Part shown: positions 53,152 through 64,000 of the stretch, piece after piece
Position numbering within the stretch: position 1 is the first letter of the stretch
How the letters are laid out: each line of letters opens with the position of its first letter
NCBI RefSeq assembly: GCF_036588685.1
Contig: NC_086375.1
Span: 7,998,001-8,062,000, forward strand
DNA length: 64,000 nucleotides
Direction: 5' to 3'
DNA from: Mytilus trossulus
Taxonomy: Eukaryota
Translations under genes and position numbers: made by a program
The notes under the pieces: model-generated
Told to the model about the DNA's origin: nothing
The model's input: only the letters and a program-made list of their open reading frames with translations
Databases searched by the model: none

Positions 53152-56100
53152 TTAAGAATCACAAATGAACAAGTTAGTAGTTAGTAATGCATTAGCAGTG
53201 AGTAAAGAAGTGTTCACAGAATTGACACACATGTCTAACTGATCTATCACTATAGTTCTCTTCATCACTGAAGTGTTGTAATCTTCTTGTAGTTTAGTAT
53301 TCACTGGGTTACCAAGATCCTCATTGTCTAAGTCTACCAGTTCTGTAGTTTCCAAACTATATATTCCACAACTGCAAATTACCTCCCCTTCTTCAACTTC
53401 CTTTGGAACTTTCCAAAAATGATGGTAGGTACAATCAGTCTTGCCATCTTCCGAGTCCTTGACAACAGTTTTTGCAATATTCTGTAAACTTTTACAAACC
53501 ACATCTAATGCTGATAATATAGCAGACCTTGTACAATAAAACTCTTCAACAAGACTTGGCATTTCAGACAGCACCTGTAAAAAACAAAACATATTAAAAA
53601 TACTGATGTAAATATATCAACATCCACCTTTATTCATATTAATTTTGCCATCCAACAAGTAAAATGTTTTATCAACTTTTAAAGATTAAATAAAATCAAT
53701 TTATAAATAAATTCTACTTATGACACCACCTCAATTTAAACTTGATCTGTGTTTTGTGGAAATAAAGAGTTGTGTTCAAGTCGCATTACAACTGGTTGAA
53801 ACAAACTAAAGGTAGAGAGATACGATAGAGACACAAAAAGATTTGATACTGATATATATTAGGTTGGGTATTAGAAAGTATTGACTATATATCTAGAAAG
53901 CACAGAATTTTTGCAAAGAAAATAAATTAATCATCAATATCGTAGAAAATCTTTGAAAGAAGTAATACTTTTTTCCTGAGATTGAAACATGTCTTCATTT
54001 CCCAGCATCCTCCTCCAGGAAGTACATATGATGAGAAAGCTAATCTCTCCATGGAATGTAGCGCACTTGAACATACTGCCTGAAAAAATAAGAGTTATCT
54101 TTTTTTAAACACTGTTCAGAAATATTGATCTCTACAGTACCCTTCAAGAGGATCGATTCGATATGTTTTTTCTCTGATTTCCGTGTTTCTCAGAATCACA
54201 CCGAGTACCGTGGATTTCACTCTTAAAATCCTCCAAAGATTCTCTCCCAACACTGTGTGGCTGTTAATTGGTTTATTGTCCATCGGATGTATTAAAAATA
54301 AATGATTGTGTGACAACATAATCGGATTACCCAGATAATTGACCAGAACATTTAATTGATCTTGGTTGCACAGGTGTGCTTTAAAATCACGGTATTAAAA
54401 ATTGAACAAATGTTTTCCTTTCTTTGACATATAAAGATGCGACAATATAATTTAAAATAAGATAATTATTATCTTTAATATTTGTTTTTGTATTATGCCA
54501 TTATCTTCGAAATAAAATGTACATACCAAAAAATATGAAGAAAATACTTGTTATTTTGTGTTTCTATTACAGTCCAGTCATGTCATACATTGTGTTCTTT
54601 CAACAAGGACGATTTTGCCACAATTAGAATCTGTTATGACTTACTCAATTCGCAATATCAGTGCATTAATTGTTCATTATTTAAAAATAAACTGGCTAAT
54701 AAAATCATGTTGTTTTTACGGTAACACGATTCATCGGATCAACAAGTAAACTTATTTATTGAGCAATGAAAAATATTATGTTTCACCAACTCGGTATATT
54801 TATACAGACTTGAATAATTTAGATTTCGAACAGAAACTGTAAAGTTGAACAAAGGAAATAACTTCAAGTGATATTGATAGCGTTGTCATTTTCGTATTTT
54901 ACAAATGTATTTCAAAGGCAACTACTGAAGACTGTACCATTAAAACACGCATGGTACCTAGGAAAGGCACTTTTAAAATGGAGAAACTAACTGTAGAGGC
55001 AAATTAATGTAAATTACACTAAAACTTTCATTATGCAATAACATAGATGAACCCAACCTTAGTTGAAATTTTGATGTGCCTTCCCATGGTCCCATGTATA
55101 TGTTTGTGGAACAGCCATTTAAAGGTGTATGCCATCTCATATGTGTTGTGTAAATATTAATATGTTTTTTTTCTTTTTTTAAAATCCATATCAAATCAAT
55201 ATCCTGGATAAATTCTATTTATGAAAATTGTTTTTACAAATTCTCAGTTATAACTTTTTCTGGAGTGTAATATATATATTCAGGTCTGAAGATTTGTTCA
55301 GGAAATATTTTAATTTTCTAAAAACATGCCCACTAACTATTGGAGAAAGCTGGCTACAATTCATACGTTCATAAATCACTTTCTCAATAACATATTTCAT
55401 TAATATTAATTGAATGAAAGGAGATGTGCACCATCAATACATCACCACCGAATGAAACCAACCTTTAATTCCTGTACTGATTCTTCATGATCACTGGTTA
55501 ACCTTAATGTTCCAACAGGAGATTCCTGTCTCTTCAGGGAAAGATAACTCTTTTTGTTGATATTTTGATGTTCTATAGAATCTAGGTGTCCAATATCTGA
55601 TGCTATTACAGTAAAACTTCTCAAAGATTGTGCTCCTGCAATAAATATGGAAAGTTCTGTTTAAAATTAACCTATTAGAATATTTAGTTCAGGCAATCTT
55701 AGGGGCTATTTATTGATTTATTACTGTAGCCTGGAAAGAATATACAGTGAAAACTAATAAATGTTTAGTTTCTCTACACATTGTATTGCAATTCTTTTGA
55801 AGTAAGATAATTTATCTTTGTCCTAATCTTTATTCTATACGAGTTTAACCCTCAAGTTTTTATATTCAATCTTTAAAATTGAGAATTGAAATGAAAAATG
55901 TGTCAAAGAGACAACAACCCGACCATAGAAAAAACAACAGCAGAAGGTAACCAACAGGTCTCCAATGTAGCGAGAAATTTTGTATTGTTTTGCTTTTCCT
56001 CTTTTTCTTGCTGAAATGTTGTCTAAATTTGATAGACTTACAAGTGGTTATCTATTTTGTGTTAGCCTTTGGTATCTTGCCTAGTTTTGTCTTTTTCATA

Positions 56101-57260
56101 AAACATGAAATATTCATCTCATTTATCTCAAGAATCTACCTAATTATTCTCTAGATGTGACAGGAATTTAGAAGATTACAATAGAGCTGGTAAAGAAACA
56201 ACAGTCAAAGTTTGGTCACAGTTTTAGACACAACCGAGTTTGACTCAGCAAGGTTTGACTGTACTTAATAATGTGAATGGATCCTTATCTACCAACCTGT
56301 TAATTTCAGTATGAATGGAATCATCTGTGAACCAAGACGTTCTACAGGTAAAATATTCTGTTTATAAAGGTAACTTTTCACTGAAGGATGAATAACTTTC
56401 TGACAGAAAAGGACTCCAACATTCAATTCTGCACATCTGTCACAAAACTTCATTATTCTACTTAAAACTGTTTTTTCTTCTGACAGCTCATTAAAAACTT
56501 CATATTCTGCATCCATAATTTCTTCTGAATCACCTGTCATGGAAATGGTTACCATGGCAACATTGATCCGATTGTTTACTTTTTTTACATTGTTTAAAGC
56601 GGCCAGAGGAAGTTGATAACCTTGTAATAGCAATCCTTGATATAATTTAGAATCAGAAACAGGAAGTCCTTCAACTGGAATTAAATATATGTTCTCTTCC
56701 CAGCTACCAGACCTTCCCTCACAAGGGAGATAACTTGCAAAAACTTGGACCAGAAGCTTAGAAAAGTTATCTAAATCATATGAATTCAGTTTACACAATG
56801 GTTTTCTACCAATTATAGTTTTAACAAAATTAGTCATTTGATTAAGACTGGAAATATCTATATTCATTTTTGAAGATTCAGCAGTAATGTCTTCAACAAC
56901 TATTGTTAAAAATCTGTCATATAACTCTGTTAAGTAAGAATTGGTGACGTTAAGATTCATCGACTTAGTCAATAATAAAACAGGTAACATAGAAACAAAA
57001 TGTCCTCCATCGGAAAAGTGTTGAAGATGACCTTGAACGGCTGTTACAATGAGTCGAATAACAGGTTTAGACACAGACAATGACTGTAGCAGACGACAAG
57101 AGGTAGAGGTCATAGTTAGATGACCTCCAACAGAATTCTGAACCATCTGGATACATCCTTTACGACATGATGCTGTTATCTTCAGGAATAAATTAAGGGC
57201 ATCTACTATATCAGGACTCACAAGGTTCTGTAATTGTAAAGTTCCAACTGATTGGTCCAT
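53152..57260 (-). CDS. MKKS: McKusick-Kaufman/Bardet-Biedl chaperonin-like protein (BBS6)
   Basis: Exons 57260-56297, 55635-55463, 54079-53969 and 53574-53152, with consistent phases. Motifs GGHLTMTSTSCRLL, HLQHFSDGG, LFCQKVIHPSVKSYL, VERLG and LPGGGC; the four-coding-exon layout resembles vertebrate MKKS. Confidence 0.93.
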
Positions 57261-58056
57261 AATTATCTACAATAAAACATGTCAATTTATTAAACTCTAT
57301 TAAACAGTGGTCCTTTAAAATGACATCAATGTCTGAGTTAATCTAGAATTTTCTCTTACTTCATGTACTTAGACTAGTTTCATGTCAGAAAACATTAAAT
57401 ATCCAATTGCACCTGGGTTTGAATAAAATTTCCTAAAACATTCTGACTCTATATGCCTATATATTCTTTAATACGAAATTCAATTACATGATATAGTTAT
57501 CATTAAACATATAGTGTAGGTTTGGAGTTTTGAATAATATTACAATAACCATTAGCTTCATTAAAACATTGGTGGATACCGGTACATTATAGTTGTCTCA
57601 ATGGTATTCATACAGGTCACATCTTCTTACACTACAGCTCAGGTGGATTTTGCTTTTTCCACTTGCCCACCATGGGCAGCCTAACCATTCCCACTCTAGC
57701 TATATTCTGTTTTATTTGAAAAAATATTGAGTACAAATGCTTATCTGCTTATTTCAATTGATTGTTCTTGAAAGTCTTTTGATAAAACAAAAGAAATTAC
57801 ATGCCCACATTAGACCAGTCATCCACTGAGGCCCCACTTATAGGGTACCAGGGATAGAACTTAAACTTTAGCAATGTAGCCCACAGCTTATATTTTGTAG
57901 CCCATATATATAGTTCTATACAAGAAAAGCAGAAATTTGAGTAGCCCAAACCAAATTTTAGGGGCCATTGGCCTGTGGGCCCCTGCTAATTTCATACCTT
58001 GGACCGTACGTAAAAATAATAAAACTTACTTTAGCAAGTACCTCATTATTTCTATT

Positions 58057-61000
58057 CTAACTCTCTGATTCTTGTTTCTTTGTTTTATTTAATTTCTTCA
58101 TTTGTCTTAGTCTTTCAGCACTTCTCTGTTGTCCAGTGCTCAGTTGCATGTACTTGTAATAAGCATATGGTAGTGTTAAAATGGAGCCGCCACCAACAAT
58201 AAGAATAAAGGAAAATATTTTGTTCTGATTTGTCCAATTACTCAGCTGCCAGAATGATGCTGAAATCCTGCAAAACAAAATAAAATCAATTTTATAATAA
58301 GTTTTCAACTGGTTATCCATCATCTAGAGGGAATAACAGATACATGTGAAGAATCTGCAAAATAGTGAGGAAAAAATCCTTAGGAAAATATTCAAGAAAG
58401 GAGAAGATTTTCAAACTTTAACAGTTGTAGTTCACTTAAAGAGATAAAATCCAGTGAACAGCAAAGAAAGAAACCAATAATAAAATTGAGAATGGAAATG
58501 GGGAATGTGTCAAAGAGACAACAACCCGACCATAGAAAAAAACAACAGCAGAAGGTCACCAACAGGTCTTAATGTAGCGAGAAATTCCCGCACCGGAAGA
58601 TCCTTCAGCTGGCCCCTAAACAAATATATACTAGTTCAGTGATAATGAACGCCATACTAATTTCCAAATTGTACGCAAGAAACTAAAATTAAAATAATAC
58701 AAGACTAACAAAGGCCAGAGGCTCCTGACTTGGGACAGGCGCAACAATGAGGCGGGGTTAAACATGTTTGTGAGAATTCAACCCTCCCCCTATACCTCTA
58801 GCCGAGTAAACGCATAACAATACGCACAATTAAATTCAGTTAGTCTAATTACTTAAGGTAAAGTATCTTGAGTGCCCAAATACAAAAATCAATTAGTATG
58901 ATAAAATCTTAGTCCTGTGGTCTGCAGAGAAATTTTTACGAAATACTAATGTTCAAATGTATATATTGGATTATGAAACACTTTCATTTGACTTTGTCAT
59001 GTTTGTATACTAGCTAATTCATACTTTTTAAACATTTTTACAATCTCTGTGTTCTTCTTCTTAATTTACAAGTAATGTTGTGCTTTAGTAGTTTGTCATC
59101 CATCAACCATCTCTTGTCATAAAGTTTAAAGGAAAATCTGAAAATAAATAACTCATATATCATCATGATAACTTTAAAAGCACCAATGCATTAACAATAA
59201 ATGGTTACAAATTAAAGACAAACTACAATAACATACATACAATGAAGGCGTGACAGTGGATAATTATGAAAAAAATATATGAAAATAAAAGAGAAGCATA
59301 CAGTATAAATTATTACAGAAATGAAGTAACTTTTAATAATGATATTCTCACCATGATATGATATGATATGAATTACAGATAAATAAAAAAAACAAGGTTA
59401 ACTAATAATTAGTAAGGTAACTGCATTTAACAGCAGACAAAACTGGATGTAGGAATGTGTTACCTATGAATAAAATTGAGAATGGAAATGGGGAATGTGT
59501 CAACAATGGTTAAAGAGACAACCACCCAACAACAGCAGAAGTTCACCAATTGATAGGTCTACAATGCAGCGTGGAATTCCCGCACCCAGAGGCGTCCTTA
59601 AGCTGGCCCTTAAACAAATATATATATTAGTTCATTGATCATTGTCTATTTGACTACTGGTCCCTGCATGTGGGGTTTGCAGACACTCAGATATCCCCTA
59701 ATAATTCCTCTTACATATTTAACCAACATAACCAAGGTGGTCAACTTGACAGAAAGCTCTCTACCTAAGTCTACCTAAGTGTTTCCAAACGCAGGAGATC
59801 AGTTTGCTCCTCTATATTTGGCTCTGGTTCATCGTCACTAACTACACTTGTGCTACTTCCGGTGTTATAGGTGTATTCAGTGTCAAAGTTATATATCGTT
59901 GGGTGTTCTTTCCAATGCTTGTCTAAGCGATTTCCAAAAATCTTTACATTCTTTGCGATCACTACGTTATCTGGTAGGCTGTTCCATACTTCCACTACTC
60001 TGTTAGAAAAGTAGTATTTTCTAATGTCTAGTTAGTCCAAATAATTATGACGTCTTGAAAGGCTATTATAATTTTTTTCTTTGACGCCTTACTTCGACTG
60101 TAAGGCGTCAAAGAAAAAAATTATAATAGCCTTACAAGACGTCATAATTATTTGGACTAAATGTCTAGTCTGCTTCTATATTTTACCAATTTCATAGAGT
60201 TGCCTCTTGTTGGCAAGCTGGTATTACGAGTAAATAGACCTTCTGTCACTTTTGAGTCATATACACCTGTTCATGCTGTTGTTATTTTGTATGTTTCTAT
60301 CATGTCGCCTCTTAGCCTTCTAAATTTTAAAGTTGGAATTTTCGTATGACAAATCTTTAAGGTTGGGTAATATCTTTGTTGCTATATGTTGGACATTTTC
60401 AATTGTCTTAATATCTTTCTTTTTGTGGGGGTTCCATACACTACTAGCATATTCAAGATGAGGACGGGCTAATGCCTTATAAATAGTAGGCAGAAGCTTT
60501 TATAATCGAAATATTTGAAAGTTCTCCCTAAACAAAAATTAATTATCAGACATGGAAGTTCAAAGTTTAATTTCTGTATACATGTAGTTAAGCAGGAGTT
60601 TAGATGACCCCCAAATAATTTTCTCATATATATTTCTGTCCATATAATTTACAAATTATGTACTTTTTACTCAATGAATGTAGTTAAGACTCCAATTCAT
60701 TTGTCAAATAGTGACTCAAGGTTCATTTATCTGGGTAAAGATTAAAAGCTACAACTACCCAACTACTATCTGATAACCTTGGTCGCCTGATTGCAAATTC
60801 ACCAGCTAAATAATTTCTTCAATGTTATAATTAAACTTGTGATGAGTGTATATTTTATGTTAGGAAAAGCGCAAACGTAACTCTTAAAATCGGAACCTCT
60901 CTAGAGTATTTATGTGAATAGTGAAAAGTCTTAAATCTGTATTTAAGGGGCAATAACTCATTTTACCCGCACTTTTCGATGGGCAGCGAATTCTTCACAA

Positions 61001-63067
61001 AGTATTTACAAGTACAACATCATTCCTAGTATTTACCAAACAATGTGAAAATCTGTTTCTTGATCTGTTGCAAAACAGTAGATCATGTTTCGATGGACAG
61101 CTTGGAACAACAGGCATTTACTAAAAACAGCTGAAATATACATTTTTTTTTATCAACATATGCAATAATTTTTTTTTAAAACAAGACACATCTACACAAT
61201 ACTTCTTAATATGTTGGGCTGCCATATGTTAAAAATTACAAGAAGTCACATGCTAGGGAATTTTTAATTTGAATCTAAACTAGTTCAAATGATTATGAAG
61301 TGTTGAAAGGCTTTCAATATTTTTCTTTTTTTTTCTTTGACGCCTTACAAATTGGCGTACAAATTTGCATACAAGCGTAAATAAGGTGTAATGAATGAAT
61401 ACATAAGTCCTGGACAATGCTAGAGAAGACCATTCGCTCCTGGTCATTTCAAAATCAATAGCTTCCATGCATGGCCATTGCAGGGGCAGATTTAGGCAGA
61501 GGTGTGGCAGGCGTGCGCCCCCCTTTAAATTTGCAAAGACGATCGTCTTCAACAAGAGACCATTCCATCTTTTTTAACAAAGTATATATAACTGTCAGTT
61601 TAACAGAATCAAATCTTTTTTAAGACAAACTTATTGACTTCATTTACCAGTAAAAACTGGCCACTATATCTAATAGTGCTTTTAAAAAGTAGTATAAAAC
61701 AGGAACATCAATCATTATGATGAGTTTATTTCAGGTTGGTGCAAGATTGGTCTGTCAAATAGAAATTCATTCTTTGGATGAAAAAAAGTCCAACAAAAGA
61801 TGGCTTCAGCGACATCAACTAAAGGTTGGTGGATATTCCAAGTAGAAAGTGCAGTACTTAAGGAGCTTTTTAATTGTAATCTCTGTCCTGCCTTTTTATT
61901 TTTCACTCTATCCGGCCCTGTTTTTTTTTTATAGTTTATCCTGACTTTTCTTACATAAATTGTCATCCTGACTTTTTTTTTTGCAAGTGTCTCATCCTGC
62001 CTTTTTTTTTTACTCAAAACTCCTGTCCTGCCTATTTTTTTCAAATTTCATCCTAGCCCCCCCCCCCCCCCCCCCCATTAAAATCAAATGATAGCTCTCT
62101 TACATGTATTACTGAATGTACATTCATTAAATAAAATATATAACTATACATTGTATTAAACTATTAAATTTGTTTGTAAAAGGCTTAGAAACAGGTTAAA
62201 CATGTTAAATGCAAGCCACATAGTTAAAGGTCTGCATCCTTAAGATATTTTGGAATTGAAAGAGTTTGAATTACAAAATTTGTATACGACTGTAAAATTT
62301 GAAAAAAATTTCGTCGTATATATATTGCTATCACATTGGCATCGTCAGCATCGTCGTCCGAATACTTTTAGTTTTCGCATTCTAACTTTAGTAAAAGCGA
62401 ATAGAAATCTATGAAATTTTAACACAAGGTTAATGACCACAAAAGGAAGGTTGGGATTGATTTTGAGAGTTTAGATCCCAATAATTAAGGAATTAGGGGC
62501 CAAAAAGGGCCCAAACAAGCGTTTTCTTGTTTTTCGCACAGTAACTTTAGTTTTAGGAAATAGAAATCTATGAAATTTTGACACAAGGTTTATGACCACA
62601 AAAGGAAGGTTGGGATTGATTTTGGGAGTTTTGGTTCTAACAGTTTAGGAATTAGGGGCCAAAAAGGGGTCCAAATAAGCATTTTTCTTGGTTTTCGCAC
62701 CATAACCTTAGTATAGATAAATAGAAATCTATGAAATTTTAACACAAGGTTTATGACCATAAAAGGAAGGTTGATAATGATTTTATGAGTTTTGGTCTTA
62801 ACAGTTTAGGAATAAGGGGCCAAAAGGGGCCAAAATTAAACTTTGTTTGATTTCATCAAAAATTGAAAAATTGGGGTTCTTTGATATGCCGAATCTAACT
62901 GTGTATGTAGATTCTTAATTTTTGGAAAGATTAGAACTTGTTCTACATCTTTACTTAGGCACCACCCTCCCTAACAACAGGACAGGTTACCTACTGTTAC
63001 TAAATGGATTCACACTAAAATGTAGTTCCCTATGGTTCTCATGTATTTGCACATAATACACATATAA
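58057..63067 (-). CDS. Putative spliced upstream ORF encoding a small transmembrane protein in the MKKS leader; start lies outside the window
   Basis: Exon 58267-58030 (ttttgttttgcag / gtaagt) has a stop at 58057. Candidate exon 63067-62991 (attttgttttcag / gtaacc) joins it in frame: LYVYYVQIHENHRELHFSVNPFSNSR-ISASFWQLSNWTNQNKIFSFILIVGGGSILTLPYAYYKYMQLSTGQQRSAERLRQMKKLNKTKKQESES*. Confidence 0.6.
59770..60530 (-). mobile_element. CR1-clade LINE 3' remnant
   Basis: YKALARPHLEYASSVWNPH, RRLRGDMIETYKI and YFSNRVVEVWNSLP. Confidence 0.85.
60032..60160. mobile_element. 129-bp fully palindromic MITE with an 8-bp TSD, inserted in the LINE
   Basis: TTAGTCCAAATAATTATGACGTCTT...AAGACGTCATAATTATTTGGACTAA flanked by ATGTCTAG on both sides. 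Confidence 0.9.
62320..62925. repeat. ~158-160-bp tandem subrepeats of a non-autonomous element
   Basis: atagaaatctatgaaatttt at 62401, 62559 and 62721; same family as 1890-2260. Confidence 0.8.
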
Positions 63068-64000
63068 CTGAAAACAAAATGGGTATATTATTGGAGCAGT
63101 TCATTCAAGAATGTATGTCATTAAGGTGTGTTGATGTGCAGGCTTTTAAAAAAAAATTGATTAGGTAAGTGGGTATTGATTCAACTAGTATGATTGACAA
63201 CTGTCATTATCACTTAACAATCAGAGACAAGGTGGACCTTTAATTACAATGCCCCACCTCCTAAACTGCCAATCAAATTGACCACATTACCTATCAACCT
63301 CAGTCTTACATAATTACACAAACCACTCCAATATGCATCTAATTCTTAATAAAGAAGTAGTTGACCTCATAACTGAATACACAAATGTGTATATTAGATA
63401 TTTGATATTTATAAGGGTGATATATTTTTTTATTGCAAATTACTTTTGATCTACATTACATAAAGTGATTCTGTAAATTATATCTGAAAGATAAATGATT
63501 AATGGATTAACAAGATCTTAAAAAAAAAAATATGAATATATAAAAGGTATTCAAGTATGGCCTATAATTTACTTGATAAATAGCCAATAATCGTCAGTAA
63601 TTAATCAACAATTTAGATTAGTTCACTTTTTTTTTTATCAGGTATTGGCTTGAAACAGTTTTGAAATTTTAAAACTTTTAATTATAACTAACCATTGTTT
63701 ATTTCCCATCAATCATAACATGCATTATGTCTATTTTAGTCATTTGAATTTTTATTAAAAGTAAATATATATTTTTGCAATCAAGAAACAATCCACATTT
63801 CAATAAAATAAGTTTTTTAATTGGTTGACGTCGAAAAAGTACATTTTCAATGCCCTGTGTCGAAAAATACTTTAAAAATTGATCAAAAGGCACTTTAAAA
63901 CTTTTAATCTTCAATGCCATATAACCTCTGTTTCAACTTACAAAATGCCCAAAAACAACATTTTTCGATTTTTTTTTGCTGGCACTTTAAAGTTTTTAGC

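What the first reader, a model, noticed from the sequence alone, without database searches (positions are those of the whole stretch)
57260..63067. Probable bicistronic MKKS transcript: a spliced upstream ORF encodes a small transmembrane protein
Seen in sequence: the MKKS ATG is only 6 nt into an exon with a clean acceptor (57266), so MKKS needs an upstream exon. The nearest strong donor (GTAAGT, 58029) ends an exon that is open almost throughout and encodes a hydrophobic helix plus basic tail (NWTNQNKIFSFILIVGGGSILTLPYAYYKYMQLSTGQQ...KKLNKTKK), stopping 27 nt before the donor. A further 77-nt candidate exon (63067-62991) is open and in phase. Established knowledge: human MKKS mRNA carries conserved uORFs encoding small mitochondrial membrane proteins (uMKKS1/uMKKS2). 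Inference: this peptide resembles uMKKS2 as I recall it (W-x3-N, LLVAGISF, YFLQRS; unverified recollection), so the microprotein-plus-chaperonin arrangement may date to the bilaterian ancestor, possibly as one longer ORF here.
Basis: partly seen in the sequence, partly recalled or inferred. Interest (0 to 1): 0.85.

Follow-up and report, generated by a model that had tools for sequence, protein, structure and literature searches.

The report
Mussel MKKS mRNA carries microprotein uORF
In the mussel Mytilus trossulus, the messenger RNA for the ciliopathy chaperonin MKKS carries, just ahead of the MKKS start, a spliced 73-codon reading frame for a small membrane protein that is kept by selection in mussels, which mirrors the human MKKS gene and may share its origin.

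Summary
The core observation holds. The window is Mytilus trossulus. The minus-strand exon with its ATG at 57260 is MKKS. Spliced contigs from 4 public runs (3 organisms, 4 studies) join 58030 directly to 57266, so the open exon 58267-58030 belongs to the MKKS 5' leader.

It lies in a dispersed repeat, and the real upstream exon is 59137-59025. That exon closes the frame with stops and supplies the ATG (59035). The result is a discrete 73-codon uORF ending 33 nt before the MKKS ATG, not a longer ORF.

The frame is under selection. Of 9 differences among Mytilus contigs, 7 are synonymous (P about 0.001). A 63-aa relative exists in another mussel-like genus, where splicing itself builds the start codon, and it probably shares a contig with that animal's MKKS.

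The peptide has one hydrophobic helix and a basic tail, with no Pfam family and no paralogue.

Three short colinear matches exist, but only by eye. A library-wide HMMER search found no vertebrate relative.

The parts
59025..59137 (-). Leader exon A (113 nt). It has an AG acceptor at 59139-59138 and a GT donor at 59024-59023. In the uORF frame it carries four stops and then the uORF ATG at 59035-59033 (context AAAATGT). It also holds three short upstream ORFs of 4 to 21 codons.
   Evidence: Contigs X2 record 8 and X3 record 21 lie on 59137/59139-59024 and continue at 58266. Translation. Splice contexts. Single copy in the genome.
58030..58267 (-). Leader exon B (238 nt). It holds most of the uORF, with the junction codon AA|G, and 27 nt of spacer after the stop. 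The donor is AAA|GTAAGT.
   Evidence: Contigs of X1, X2, X3 and X24. Translation. Single copy in the genome.
58057..59035 (-). Span of the spliced uORF: 59035-59025 joined to 58267-58057, 73 codons plus a TAG stop. The intron 59024-58268 lies inside this span. The product has a short basic N-terminus, a hydrophobic helix at about residues 21-39, and a basic K/R/Q-rich tail.
   Evidence: Read exon by exon. Hydropathy maximum 1.82 over 19 residues. All-helical model with mean pLDDT 69. 7 of 9 differences are synonymous in this frame, against 0 and 1 of 9 in the other two frames.
57267..58029 (-). Intron between leader exon B and the first MKKS coding exon (GTAAGT...TTGTAG).
   Evidence: Skipped in contigs X2 record 8, X24 record 14 and X1 record 1.
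56295..57266 (-). First MKKS coding exon. The ATG is at 57260-57258 (context ATAATTATGG), 33 nt after the uORF stop and in the same frame. The 3' end is approximate.
   Evidence: Pfam Cpn60_TCP1 7e-28. 100% identity to M. trossulus MKKS-like residues 1-322.
53152..55642 (-). Remaining MKKS coding exons, at about 55642-55463, 54085-53890 and 53660-53152.
   Evidence: tblastn of P0001 against the window.
62991..63067 (-). It is NOT part of the transcript and is a piece of a dispersed repeat.
   Evidence: Window 63000-64000 matches at least 40 other places in the genome at 86-98% identity. High-depth repeat contigs end here, and no MKKS contig joins it.

Best explanation
The mussel MKKS gene is transcribed with at least three non-coding-for-MKKS leader exons: an unplaced 5' exon, exon A at 59137-59025 and exon B at 58267-58030. 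Splicing of A to B creates a 73-codon upstream ORF. Its ATG comes from exon A and its body from exon B. The uORF encodes a single-pass, helical membrane microprotein with a basic C-terminal tail. It ends 33 nt before the MKKS ATG, so the mRNA is functionally bicistronic. Shown: the splice structure, the ORF, purifying selection on its amino-acid sequence within Mytilus, and a diverged homologue with the same build in another mussel genus. Inferred: the peptide is made and inserts into a membrane (mitochondrial by analogy with human uMKKS1/2), and translating it lowers initiation at MKKS, together with the mini-uORFs before and after it. MKKS would then be reached by leaky scanning or re-initiation.
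For:: intron-less contigs from 4 runs (3 organisms, 4 studies) join 59025>58267 and 58030>57266 at canonical GT-AG sites. One 1202-nt contig carries exon A, exon B and about 850 nt of the MKKS exon; both leader exons are single copy, so the contigs do not come from a retrocopy; there are stops and then an ATG in exon A, the frame is open to TAG 58059-58057, and the uORF ATG has A at -3; all 9 differences seen in the contigs inside the exon B part of the frame were scored. Seven are synonymous third-position changes and two are conservative (L>I, Y>H). The chance of 7 or more synonymous is about 0.001, and the other two frames give 0/9 and 1/9. HMMER against 1.84 billion representatives gives one small-protein hit, P0014 (63 aa, E 9e-4), covering residues 5-64; pairwise BLASTP gives 2e-11; this is a family of 63-aa forms that begin with M, and 80-81-aa genomic ORFs that are identical except that they read R at the acceptor and run on into intron translation. 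This pattern appears in three sequence variants, so the start codon there is assembled by splicing (AT|G); the peptide ORF P0020, MKKS exon 1 (P0044, 61% identical to Mytilus) and the MKKS last exon (P0035) all list the same longest contig, 171,898 nt; one hydrophobic 19-mer (KD 1.8-2.0) in all members, a tail with 9 K+R, and an all-helical model; no paralogue in the genome.
Against: There is no ribosome profiling, mass spectrometry or localisation data. The runs are only guessed to be RNA and are contigs, so they show presence but not abundance, ends or full-length isoforms. Three short uORFs precede the ATG in exon A, and at least 126 nt of further leader (X3 record 21) is unplaced. Conservation of the ATG itself in other Mytilus species was not visible in the listed differences. 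Openness of the frame alone is not rare here (14%).
Confidence: 0.78

Rival explanations
1. The mussel peptide is the orthologue of vertebrate uMKKS2, so the microprotein-plus-MKKS unit predates the split of protostomes and deuterostomes. This extends the best explanation rather than opposing it. Its alternative is independent origin.
For: Both lie in the leader of the same gene (PMC11837024). Human uMKKS2 (50 aa, supplement of PMC7066179) has one hydrophobic helix. By eye it shares with Mytilus, in the same order, W-x3-N-W before the helix, S-F inside it (S-F is invariant in the mussel family), and QRSA after it (Q-R is invariant in mussels), followed by a K/Q/S-rich tail with an acidic end. 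My hand BLOSUM62 sums are about 23 and 27 for the two ungapped blocks, which is roughly E 0.3 and 0.1 for this one pair. The peptide evolves fast: 33% identity between mussel genera where MKKS keeps 61%. Weak similarity at the distance between phyla is therefore expected even if the peptides are homologous.
Against: HMMER over the whole library listed no vertebrate protein at E<=0.001. The alignment needs an indel of about 16 residues between the helix and QRSA. The W-x3-N-W motif is absent from the other mussel genus. The motifs were chosen after the fact. No intermediate taxa could be examined. A review describes uMKKS conservation only 'across mammals'.
Confidence: 0.35
2. The frame acts only as a regulatory uORF, or is simply a leader exon. 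The peptide itself has no function, and conservation reflects constraints on the RNA or on translational control.
For: uORFs commonly act in cis. The leader has several other mini-uORFs (and direct reading). There is no protein-level evidence. Open frames of this length are not rare in this window.
Against: The excess of synonymous changes is specific to this frame. The hydrophobic helix, the G-x-Q-R motif and the basic tail are kept at 33% identity in another genus while the nucleotide sequence must have diverged widely. RNA-level constraint would not give that pattern.
Confidence: 0.12
3. The microprotein is a separate gene with its own short polyadenylated transcripts, and the joined contigs are read-through or conjoined isoforms. 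MKKS protein would come mainly from other transcripts.
For: In human, a short transcript made by alternative polyadenylation within the leader carries only the uORFs. Contigs cannot show ends or proportions. X2's contig stops exactly at the start of exon A, which hints at alternative upstream exons.
Against: The MKKS coding exon starts at an acceptor 6 nt before its ATG, so it needs an upstream exon, and the only one seen in four runs is exon B. No contig showed another 5' exon joined to 57266.
Confidence: 0.1

Closest known systems
Human uMKKS2 (MKKS uORF2, 50 aa; Akimoto et al. 2013 as cited in PMC11837024; sequence in the supplement of PMC7066179)
   Same: It is encoded in the MKKS 5' leader upstream of the main ATG. 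It is a small protein with one hydrophobic helix, a short N-terminal part before it and a polar K/Q/S-rich tail after it. It shares the colinear short motifs W-x3-N-W, S-F and QRSA with the Mytilus peptide (by eye).
   Different: 73 aa against 50 aa, with about 16 extra residues between the helix and QRSA. The mussel ORF is split by an intron and gets its ATG from the upstream exon. No significant match was found in a library-wide HMMER search. Translation and mitochondrial location are shown for human only.
Human uMKKS1 (MKKS uORF1, 63 aa; PMC8448870, PMC10908861)
   Same: It lies in the same leader, is of similar size, and has one hydrophobic helix near the N-terminus. It is in frame with the MKKS coding sequence, as the mussel uORF is.
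   Different: No shared motif was found by eye. The human tail is acidic or neutral, while the mussel tail is strongly basic. The mussel leader exons seen here hold only one long uORF.
Other uORF-encoded membrane microproteins of bicistronic animal mRNAs (SLC35A4 uORF, MIEF1 uORF; PMC10908861, PMC7530721)
   Same: A conserved peptide-coding uORF that both yields a small, often mitochondrial, protein and damps translation of the main ORF.
   Different: These sit in unrelated host genes and have unrelated sequences. The functions of the mussel peptide are only inferred.

Membership tests
Vertebrate uMKKS2 microprotein | ORF lies in the 5' leader of the MKKS mRNA, upstream of the MKKS ATG | tested here: met
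   Spliced contigs join the uORF exon to the MKKS start exon. The downstream ORF is MKKS.
Vertebrate uMKKS2 microprotein | Small protein with a single hydrophobic (membrane) helix | tested here: met
   73 aa. Best 19-residue hydropathy 1.82, at residues 17-35 of the exon B part. Helical model.
Vertebrate uMKKS2 microprotein | Recognisable sequence homology to uMKKS2 | tested here: inconclusive
   phmmer over 1.84 billion representatives listed no vertebrate hit at E<=0.001. By eye against the published human sequence there are three colinear short motifs, which need a large gap. A formal pairwise or profile test was not run, because there is no reference for the human peptide.
Vertebrate uMKKS2 microprotein | Translated in vivo and found in mitochondrial membrane fractions; represses MKKS translation; short uORF-only transcripts by polyadenylation in the leader | not testable with these tools
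   These are reported for human cells. For the mussel only contigs were available.
Vertebrate uMKKS1 microprotein | Sequence similarity to the 63-aa human peptide | tested here: not met
   The human sequence was read in the supplement of PMC8448870. None of the columns invariant in mussels (S-F, V-G-x-G, L-x2-P, G-x-Q-R) has a counterpart. This was a by-eye comparison only.
MKKS/BBS6 chaperonin-like protein (downstream ORF) | Group II chaperonin (Cpn60_TCP1) domain, with the nearest named relatives being MKKS rather than CCT subunits | tested here: met
   PF00118 at 7e-28. The named hits are Mytilus 'MKKS-like' and vertebrate MKKS at 26-30% identity, E 1e-26 to 1e-35.
Pfam DUF7197 | Score above the curated cut-off (27 bits) | tested here: not met
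   15.2 bits, E 0.018, and only for the 88-aa genomic ORF that includes intron translation. There was no hit at E<=10 for the exon part or for any family member.

The most novel reading that the evidence does not exclude
The mussel peptide and human uMKKS2 descend from one ancestral uORF. If so, a membrane microprotein has been co-transcribed with MKKS/BBS6 since before protostomes and deuterostomes split (more than 550 million years ago), which would imply a functional tie between the microprotein and the ciliary chaperonin. A further, less likely, twist: the uORF is in frame with MKKS and separated from it only by one TAG and 11 sense codons, so stop-codon read-through could give a membrane-anchored MKKS isoform (my estimate under 0.05).
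Probability: 0.35. Interest if true: 0.8.

Novelty: new member of a known kind. Interest (0 to 1): 0.6.

Why it matters
Human MKKS is one of the textbook cases of an animal mRNA that encodes microproteins ahead of its main protein, but what uMKKS1 and uMKKS2 do, and how old they are, is unknown. A selected membrane microprotein in the MKKS leader of a mollusc shows that the arrangement is not peculiar to mammals. If the two are homologous, this would be one of the oldest bicistronic units in animals. It would give a second, distant model for asking why this peptide travels with a cilia chaperonin. If the two arose independently, the repeated gain points to a functional reason for pairing them. 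The peptide is not in any named protein set: the family is represented only by unnamed small ORFs from metagenome and run assemblies. The locus also shows a start codon that depends on splicing, which ORF finders working on genomic DNA miss.

Tried and rejected
It lies in a repeat and is not joined to 58267 in any MKKS contig.

(2) 'Last exon of a longer gene' and 'one longer ORF' were rejected. There are in-frame stops in exon A and the exon is spliced onward to MKKS.

(3) The DUF7197 lead was rejected. It is below the cut-off and disappears without the intron-derived residues.

(4) The word-based protein search with the 88-aa genomic ORF found nothing. P0012 and P0013 from HMMER are long repeat proteins that match the G-rich helix in several stretches, so I took them as chance. 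P0030 and P0031, listed as cluster mates of the small peptides, are unrelated by sequence.

(5) The ESM Atlas was searched with the Mytilus peptide and with P0016. The best scores were 0.82 and 0.81, which is noise level.

(7) Two scans of metagenome contigs, with P0044 and P0020, found no confirmed locus.

(8) The joined 73-aa model was not sent to any search tool. Exons were searched by reference only.

(9) The unplaced 5' exon (126 nt in X3 record 21) could not be located.

(10) The supplement of PMC7530721, which gives the taxonomic range of the MKKS conserved uORF, is not held.
Full report
WHAT IS THERE. The minus strand of the window holds a 323-codon ORF (57260-56289) with a Cpn60_TCP1 chaperonin domain (7e-28). 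It is 100% identical to the NCBI protein 'molecular chaperone MKKS-like [Mytilus trossulus]'. It is 26-30% identical to fish and frog MKKS. The window is therefore Mytilus trossulus and the gene is MKKS/BBS6. The remaining coding exons lie at about 55642-53152.

TRANSCRIPT STRUCTURE. I laid the contigs of four public runs (three coded organisms, four studies) on 57095-63090. The runs are only guessed to be RNA, but the contigs lack introns.
- X2 record 8 (1202 nt) lies on 59137-59024, then 58266-58030, then 57266-57095, and runs on for about 680 nt more into the MKKS exon.
- X24 record 14 and X1 record 1 show the 58030>57266 junction.
- X3 record 21 shows 59024>58266 and carries 126 further 5' letters that lie nowhere on the laid stretch.
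All junctions are canonical once the one ambiguous G is assigned: the introns are 59024-58268 and 58029-57267, GT...AG. Both leader exons are single copy in the 1.3-Gb genome, so the contigs do not come from a processed copy.

The proposed 77-nt exon 63067-62991 is not. Window 63000-64000 is a dispersed repeat with at least 40 near-full-length copies at 86-98% identity. The contigs on it are high-depth repeat contigs, and none joins 58267.

THE READING FRAME. I read the exons one by one by reference and sent no joined model to any tool.
- In the frame that continues into exon B, exon A (59137-59025) reads through four stops. It then reaches ATG at 59035-59033 (A at -3), followed by two codons and the first two bases of a junction codon, AA|G.
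- Exon B continues open for 69 codons to TAG 58059-58057.
- The ORF is thus a discrete 73-codon uORF whose start depends on the A-B splice. It is not part of a longer ORF.
- Three shorter uORFs (4, 5 and 21 codons) precede it in exon A.
- After its stop come 27 nt of exon B and 6 nt of the MKKS exon. That is 33 nt, so the uORF is in frame with MKKS with no other stop between them.
- A 6-codon mini-uORF (ATG 58046) crosses the junction and stops 2 nt before the MKKS ATG, which itself has a strong context (A at -3, G at +4). These last points are read directly.

IS IT CODING? Openness alone says little, because 14% of random 237-nt pieces of this window have 69 or more open codons. Two other lines carry the case.

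First, substitutions within Mytilus. The contigs differ from the window at nine sites inside the exon B part of the frame, and the counts per contig in table 8 show the list is complete. Seven are synonymous third-position changes and two are conservative (L>I, Y>H). Placing the same base changes at random gives 7 or more synonymous about once in 1000 trials. The other two frames score 0/9 and 1/9.

Second, a distant homologue. phmmer of the exon B peptide against 1.84 billion cluster representatives gave three hits. Two are long repeat proteins that match the glycine-rich helix several times. One is a 63-aa protein, P0014, aligned over residues 5-64 (E 9e-4 for the whole library; pairwise BLASTP 2e-11). 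A profile search then found its close kin. The invariant columns across the family are S-F, V-G-x-G, L-x2-P, M, G-x-Q-R, R and two K.

The family comes in two forms. The 63-aa forms begin with M-F-K-R. The 80-81-aa forms are identical from F-K-R onward, but read R in place of M and continue upstream through what looks like a translated polypyrimidine tract, as the 88-aa genomic ORF does in Mytilus. The pairing recurs in three sequence variants (P0014/P0015, P0019/P0032, and P0016 with P0020-like members). An R codon cannot serve as a start. The simplest reading is that the long forms are genomic and the short forms are spliced, with the start codon assembled as AT|G across the junction. In both genera, then, the start of the uORF is supplied by the upstream exon.

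The other animal is unnamed. Its MKKS exon 1 (P0044) is 61% identical to Mytilus. P0044, the MKKS last exon (P0035) and the peptide ORF (P0020) all report the same longest contig, 171,898 nt.

THE PRODUCT. All members have one hydrophobic stretch (Kyte-Doolittle 1.8-2.0 over 19 residues) followed by a tail with nine K+R. AlphaFold2 with the small alignment gives an all-helical model of modest confidence (mean pLDDT 69). No Pfam family matches. The weak DUF7197 hit depended on intron-derived residues. There is no paralogue in the genome. The ESM Atlas gave only noise-level neighbours.

HOW IT MOST LIKELY WORKS. The following are shown:
- a spliced leader carrying a selected 73-codon ORF immediately before MKKS;
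- a start codon that exists only after splicing;
- a conserved one-helix architecture.

The following are inferred from the human precedent. There, uMKKS1 and uMKKS2 are translated, sit in mitochondrial membrane fractions and repress the main ORF (PMC11837024; PMC10908861; PMC7530721; PMC12573267). By analogy, the mussel peptide would be made and inserted into a membrane, and ribosomes that translate it would largely fail to start at MKKS 33 nt later. MKKS output would then depend on leaky scanning or re-initiation.

COMPARISON WITH THE HUMAN PEPTIDES. uMKKS1 (63 aa) was read in the supplement of PMC8448870. It shares only the general build, has no mussel-invariant motif, and has an acidic rather than basic tail.

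By eye, Mytilus and uMKKS2 share the following, in this order:
- W-x3-N-W before the helix (mussel residues 10-15, human 6-11);
- S-F in the helix, one residue out of register with the first motif;
- an exact QRSA after the helix (mussel 51-54, human 30-33);
- a K/Q/S-rich tail with an acidic end.

My hand-summed BLOSUM62 scores for the two ungapped blocks are about 23 and 27, which corresponds to single-pair E-values of roughly 0.3 and 0.1. That is suggestive together, but it is post hoc. Against homology:
- a gap of about 16 residues is needed;
- the W motif is absent from the other mussel genus;
- the library-wide HMMER run listed no vertebrate protein.

The mussel peptide falls to 33% identity between genera where MKKS keeps 61%, so weak similarity across phyla would be expected even for true orthologues. 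I put common ancestry with uMKKS2 at about 0.35.

VERDICT. The 'bicistronic MKKS with a spliced membrane-microprotein uORF' reading is supported for mussels. The bilaterian-ancestor claim remains an open and testable possibility. It concerns different DNA, and I did not test it. This scan had not reported the MKKS locus before.

Noticed in passing
window 58057-57258 (minus strand): The uORF is in the same frame as MKKS. After its TAG there are 11 sense codons and no other stop before the MKKS ATG, so read-through of one stop would fuse the membrane peptide to MKKS. Human uMKKS1 is also reported to be in frame with MKKS. This may be chance: roughly 1 in 7 by my estimate.
   Followed up: partly
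window 58046-57263 (minus strand, across the 58030|57266 junction): A 6-codon mini-uORF starts in exon B and stops 2 nt before the MKKS ATG. Exon A holds three more short uORFs (4, 5 and 21 codons).
   Followed up: no
window 63000-64000: Dispersed repeat with at least 40 near-full-length copies in the genome at 86-98% identity. It has no long ORF in this copy.
   Followed up: partly
window 58480-58800 and 59295-59700: Two intronic stretches with extreme contig depth in all four runs (up to about 1e5). This looks like an abundant, transcribed short repeat family flanking leader exon A.
   Followed up: no
window 62363-62843: Three tandem copies of a 161-nt unit (80-83% identity). They are also very deeply covered in the runs.
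   Followed up: no
window 60032-60160: Inverted repeat with 61-nt arms, 98% complementary and 7 nt apart. It resembles a MITE or hairpin. A related piece recurs near 61300-61360.
   Followed up: no
P0014, P0016, P0019 versus P0015, P0020, P0032 (other mussel-like genus): The spliced and genomic forms of the same small ORF differ only by M versus R at the acceptor. This implies a start codon assembled by splicing (AT|G), which is invisible to ORF finders working on genomic DNA.
   Followed up: partly
window 62060-62083 (minus strand listing): A run of about 24 G next to a repeat with reiterated AAAAAGGCAGGA-like units (61900-62050).
   Followed up: no
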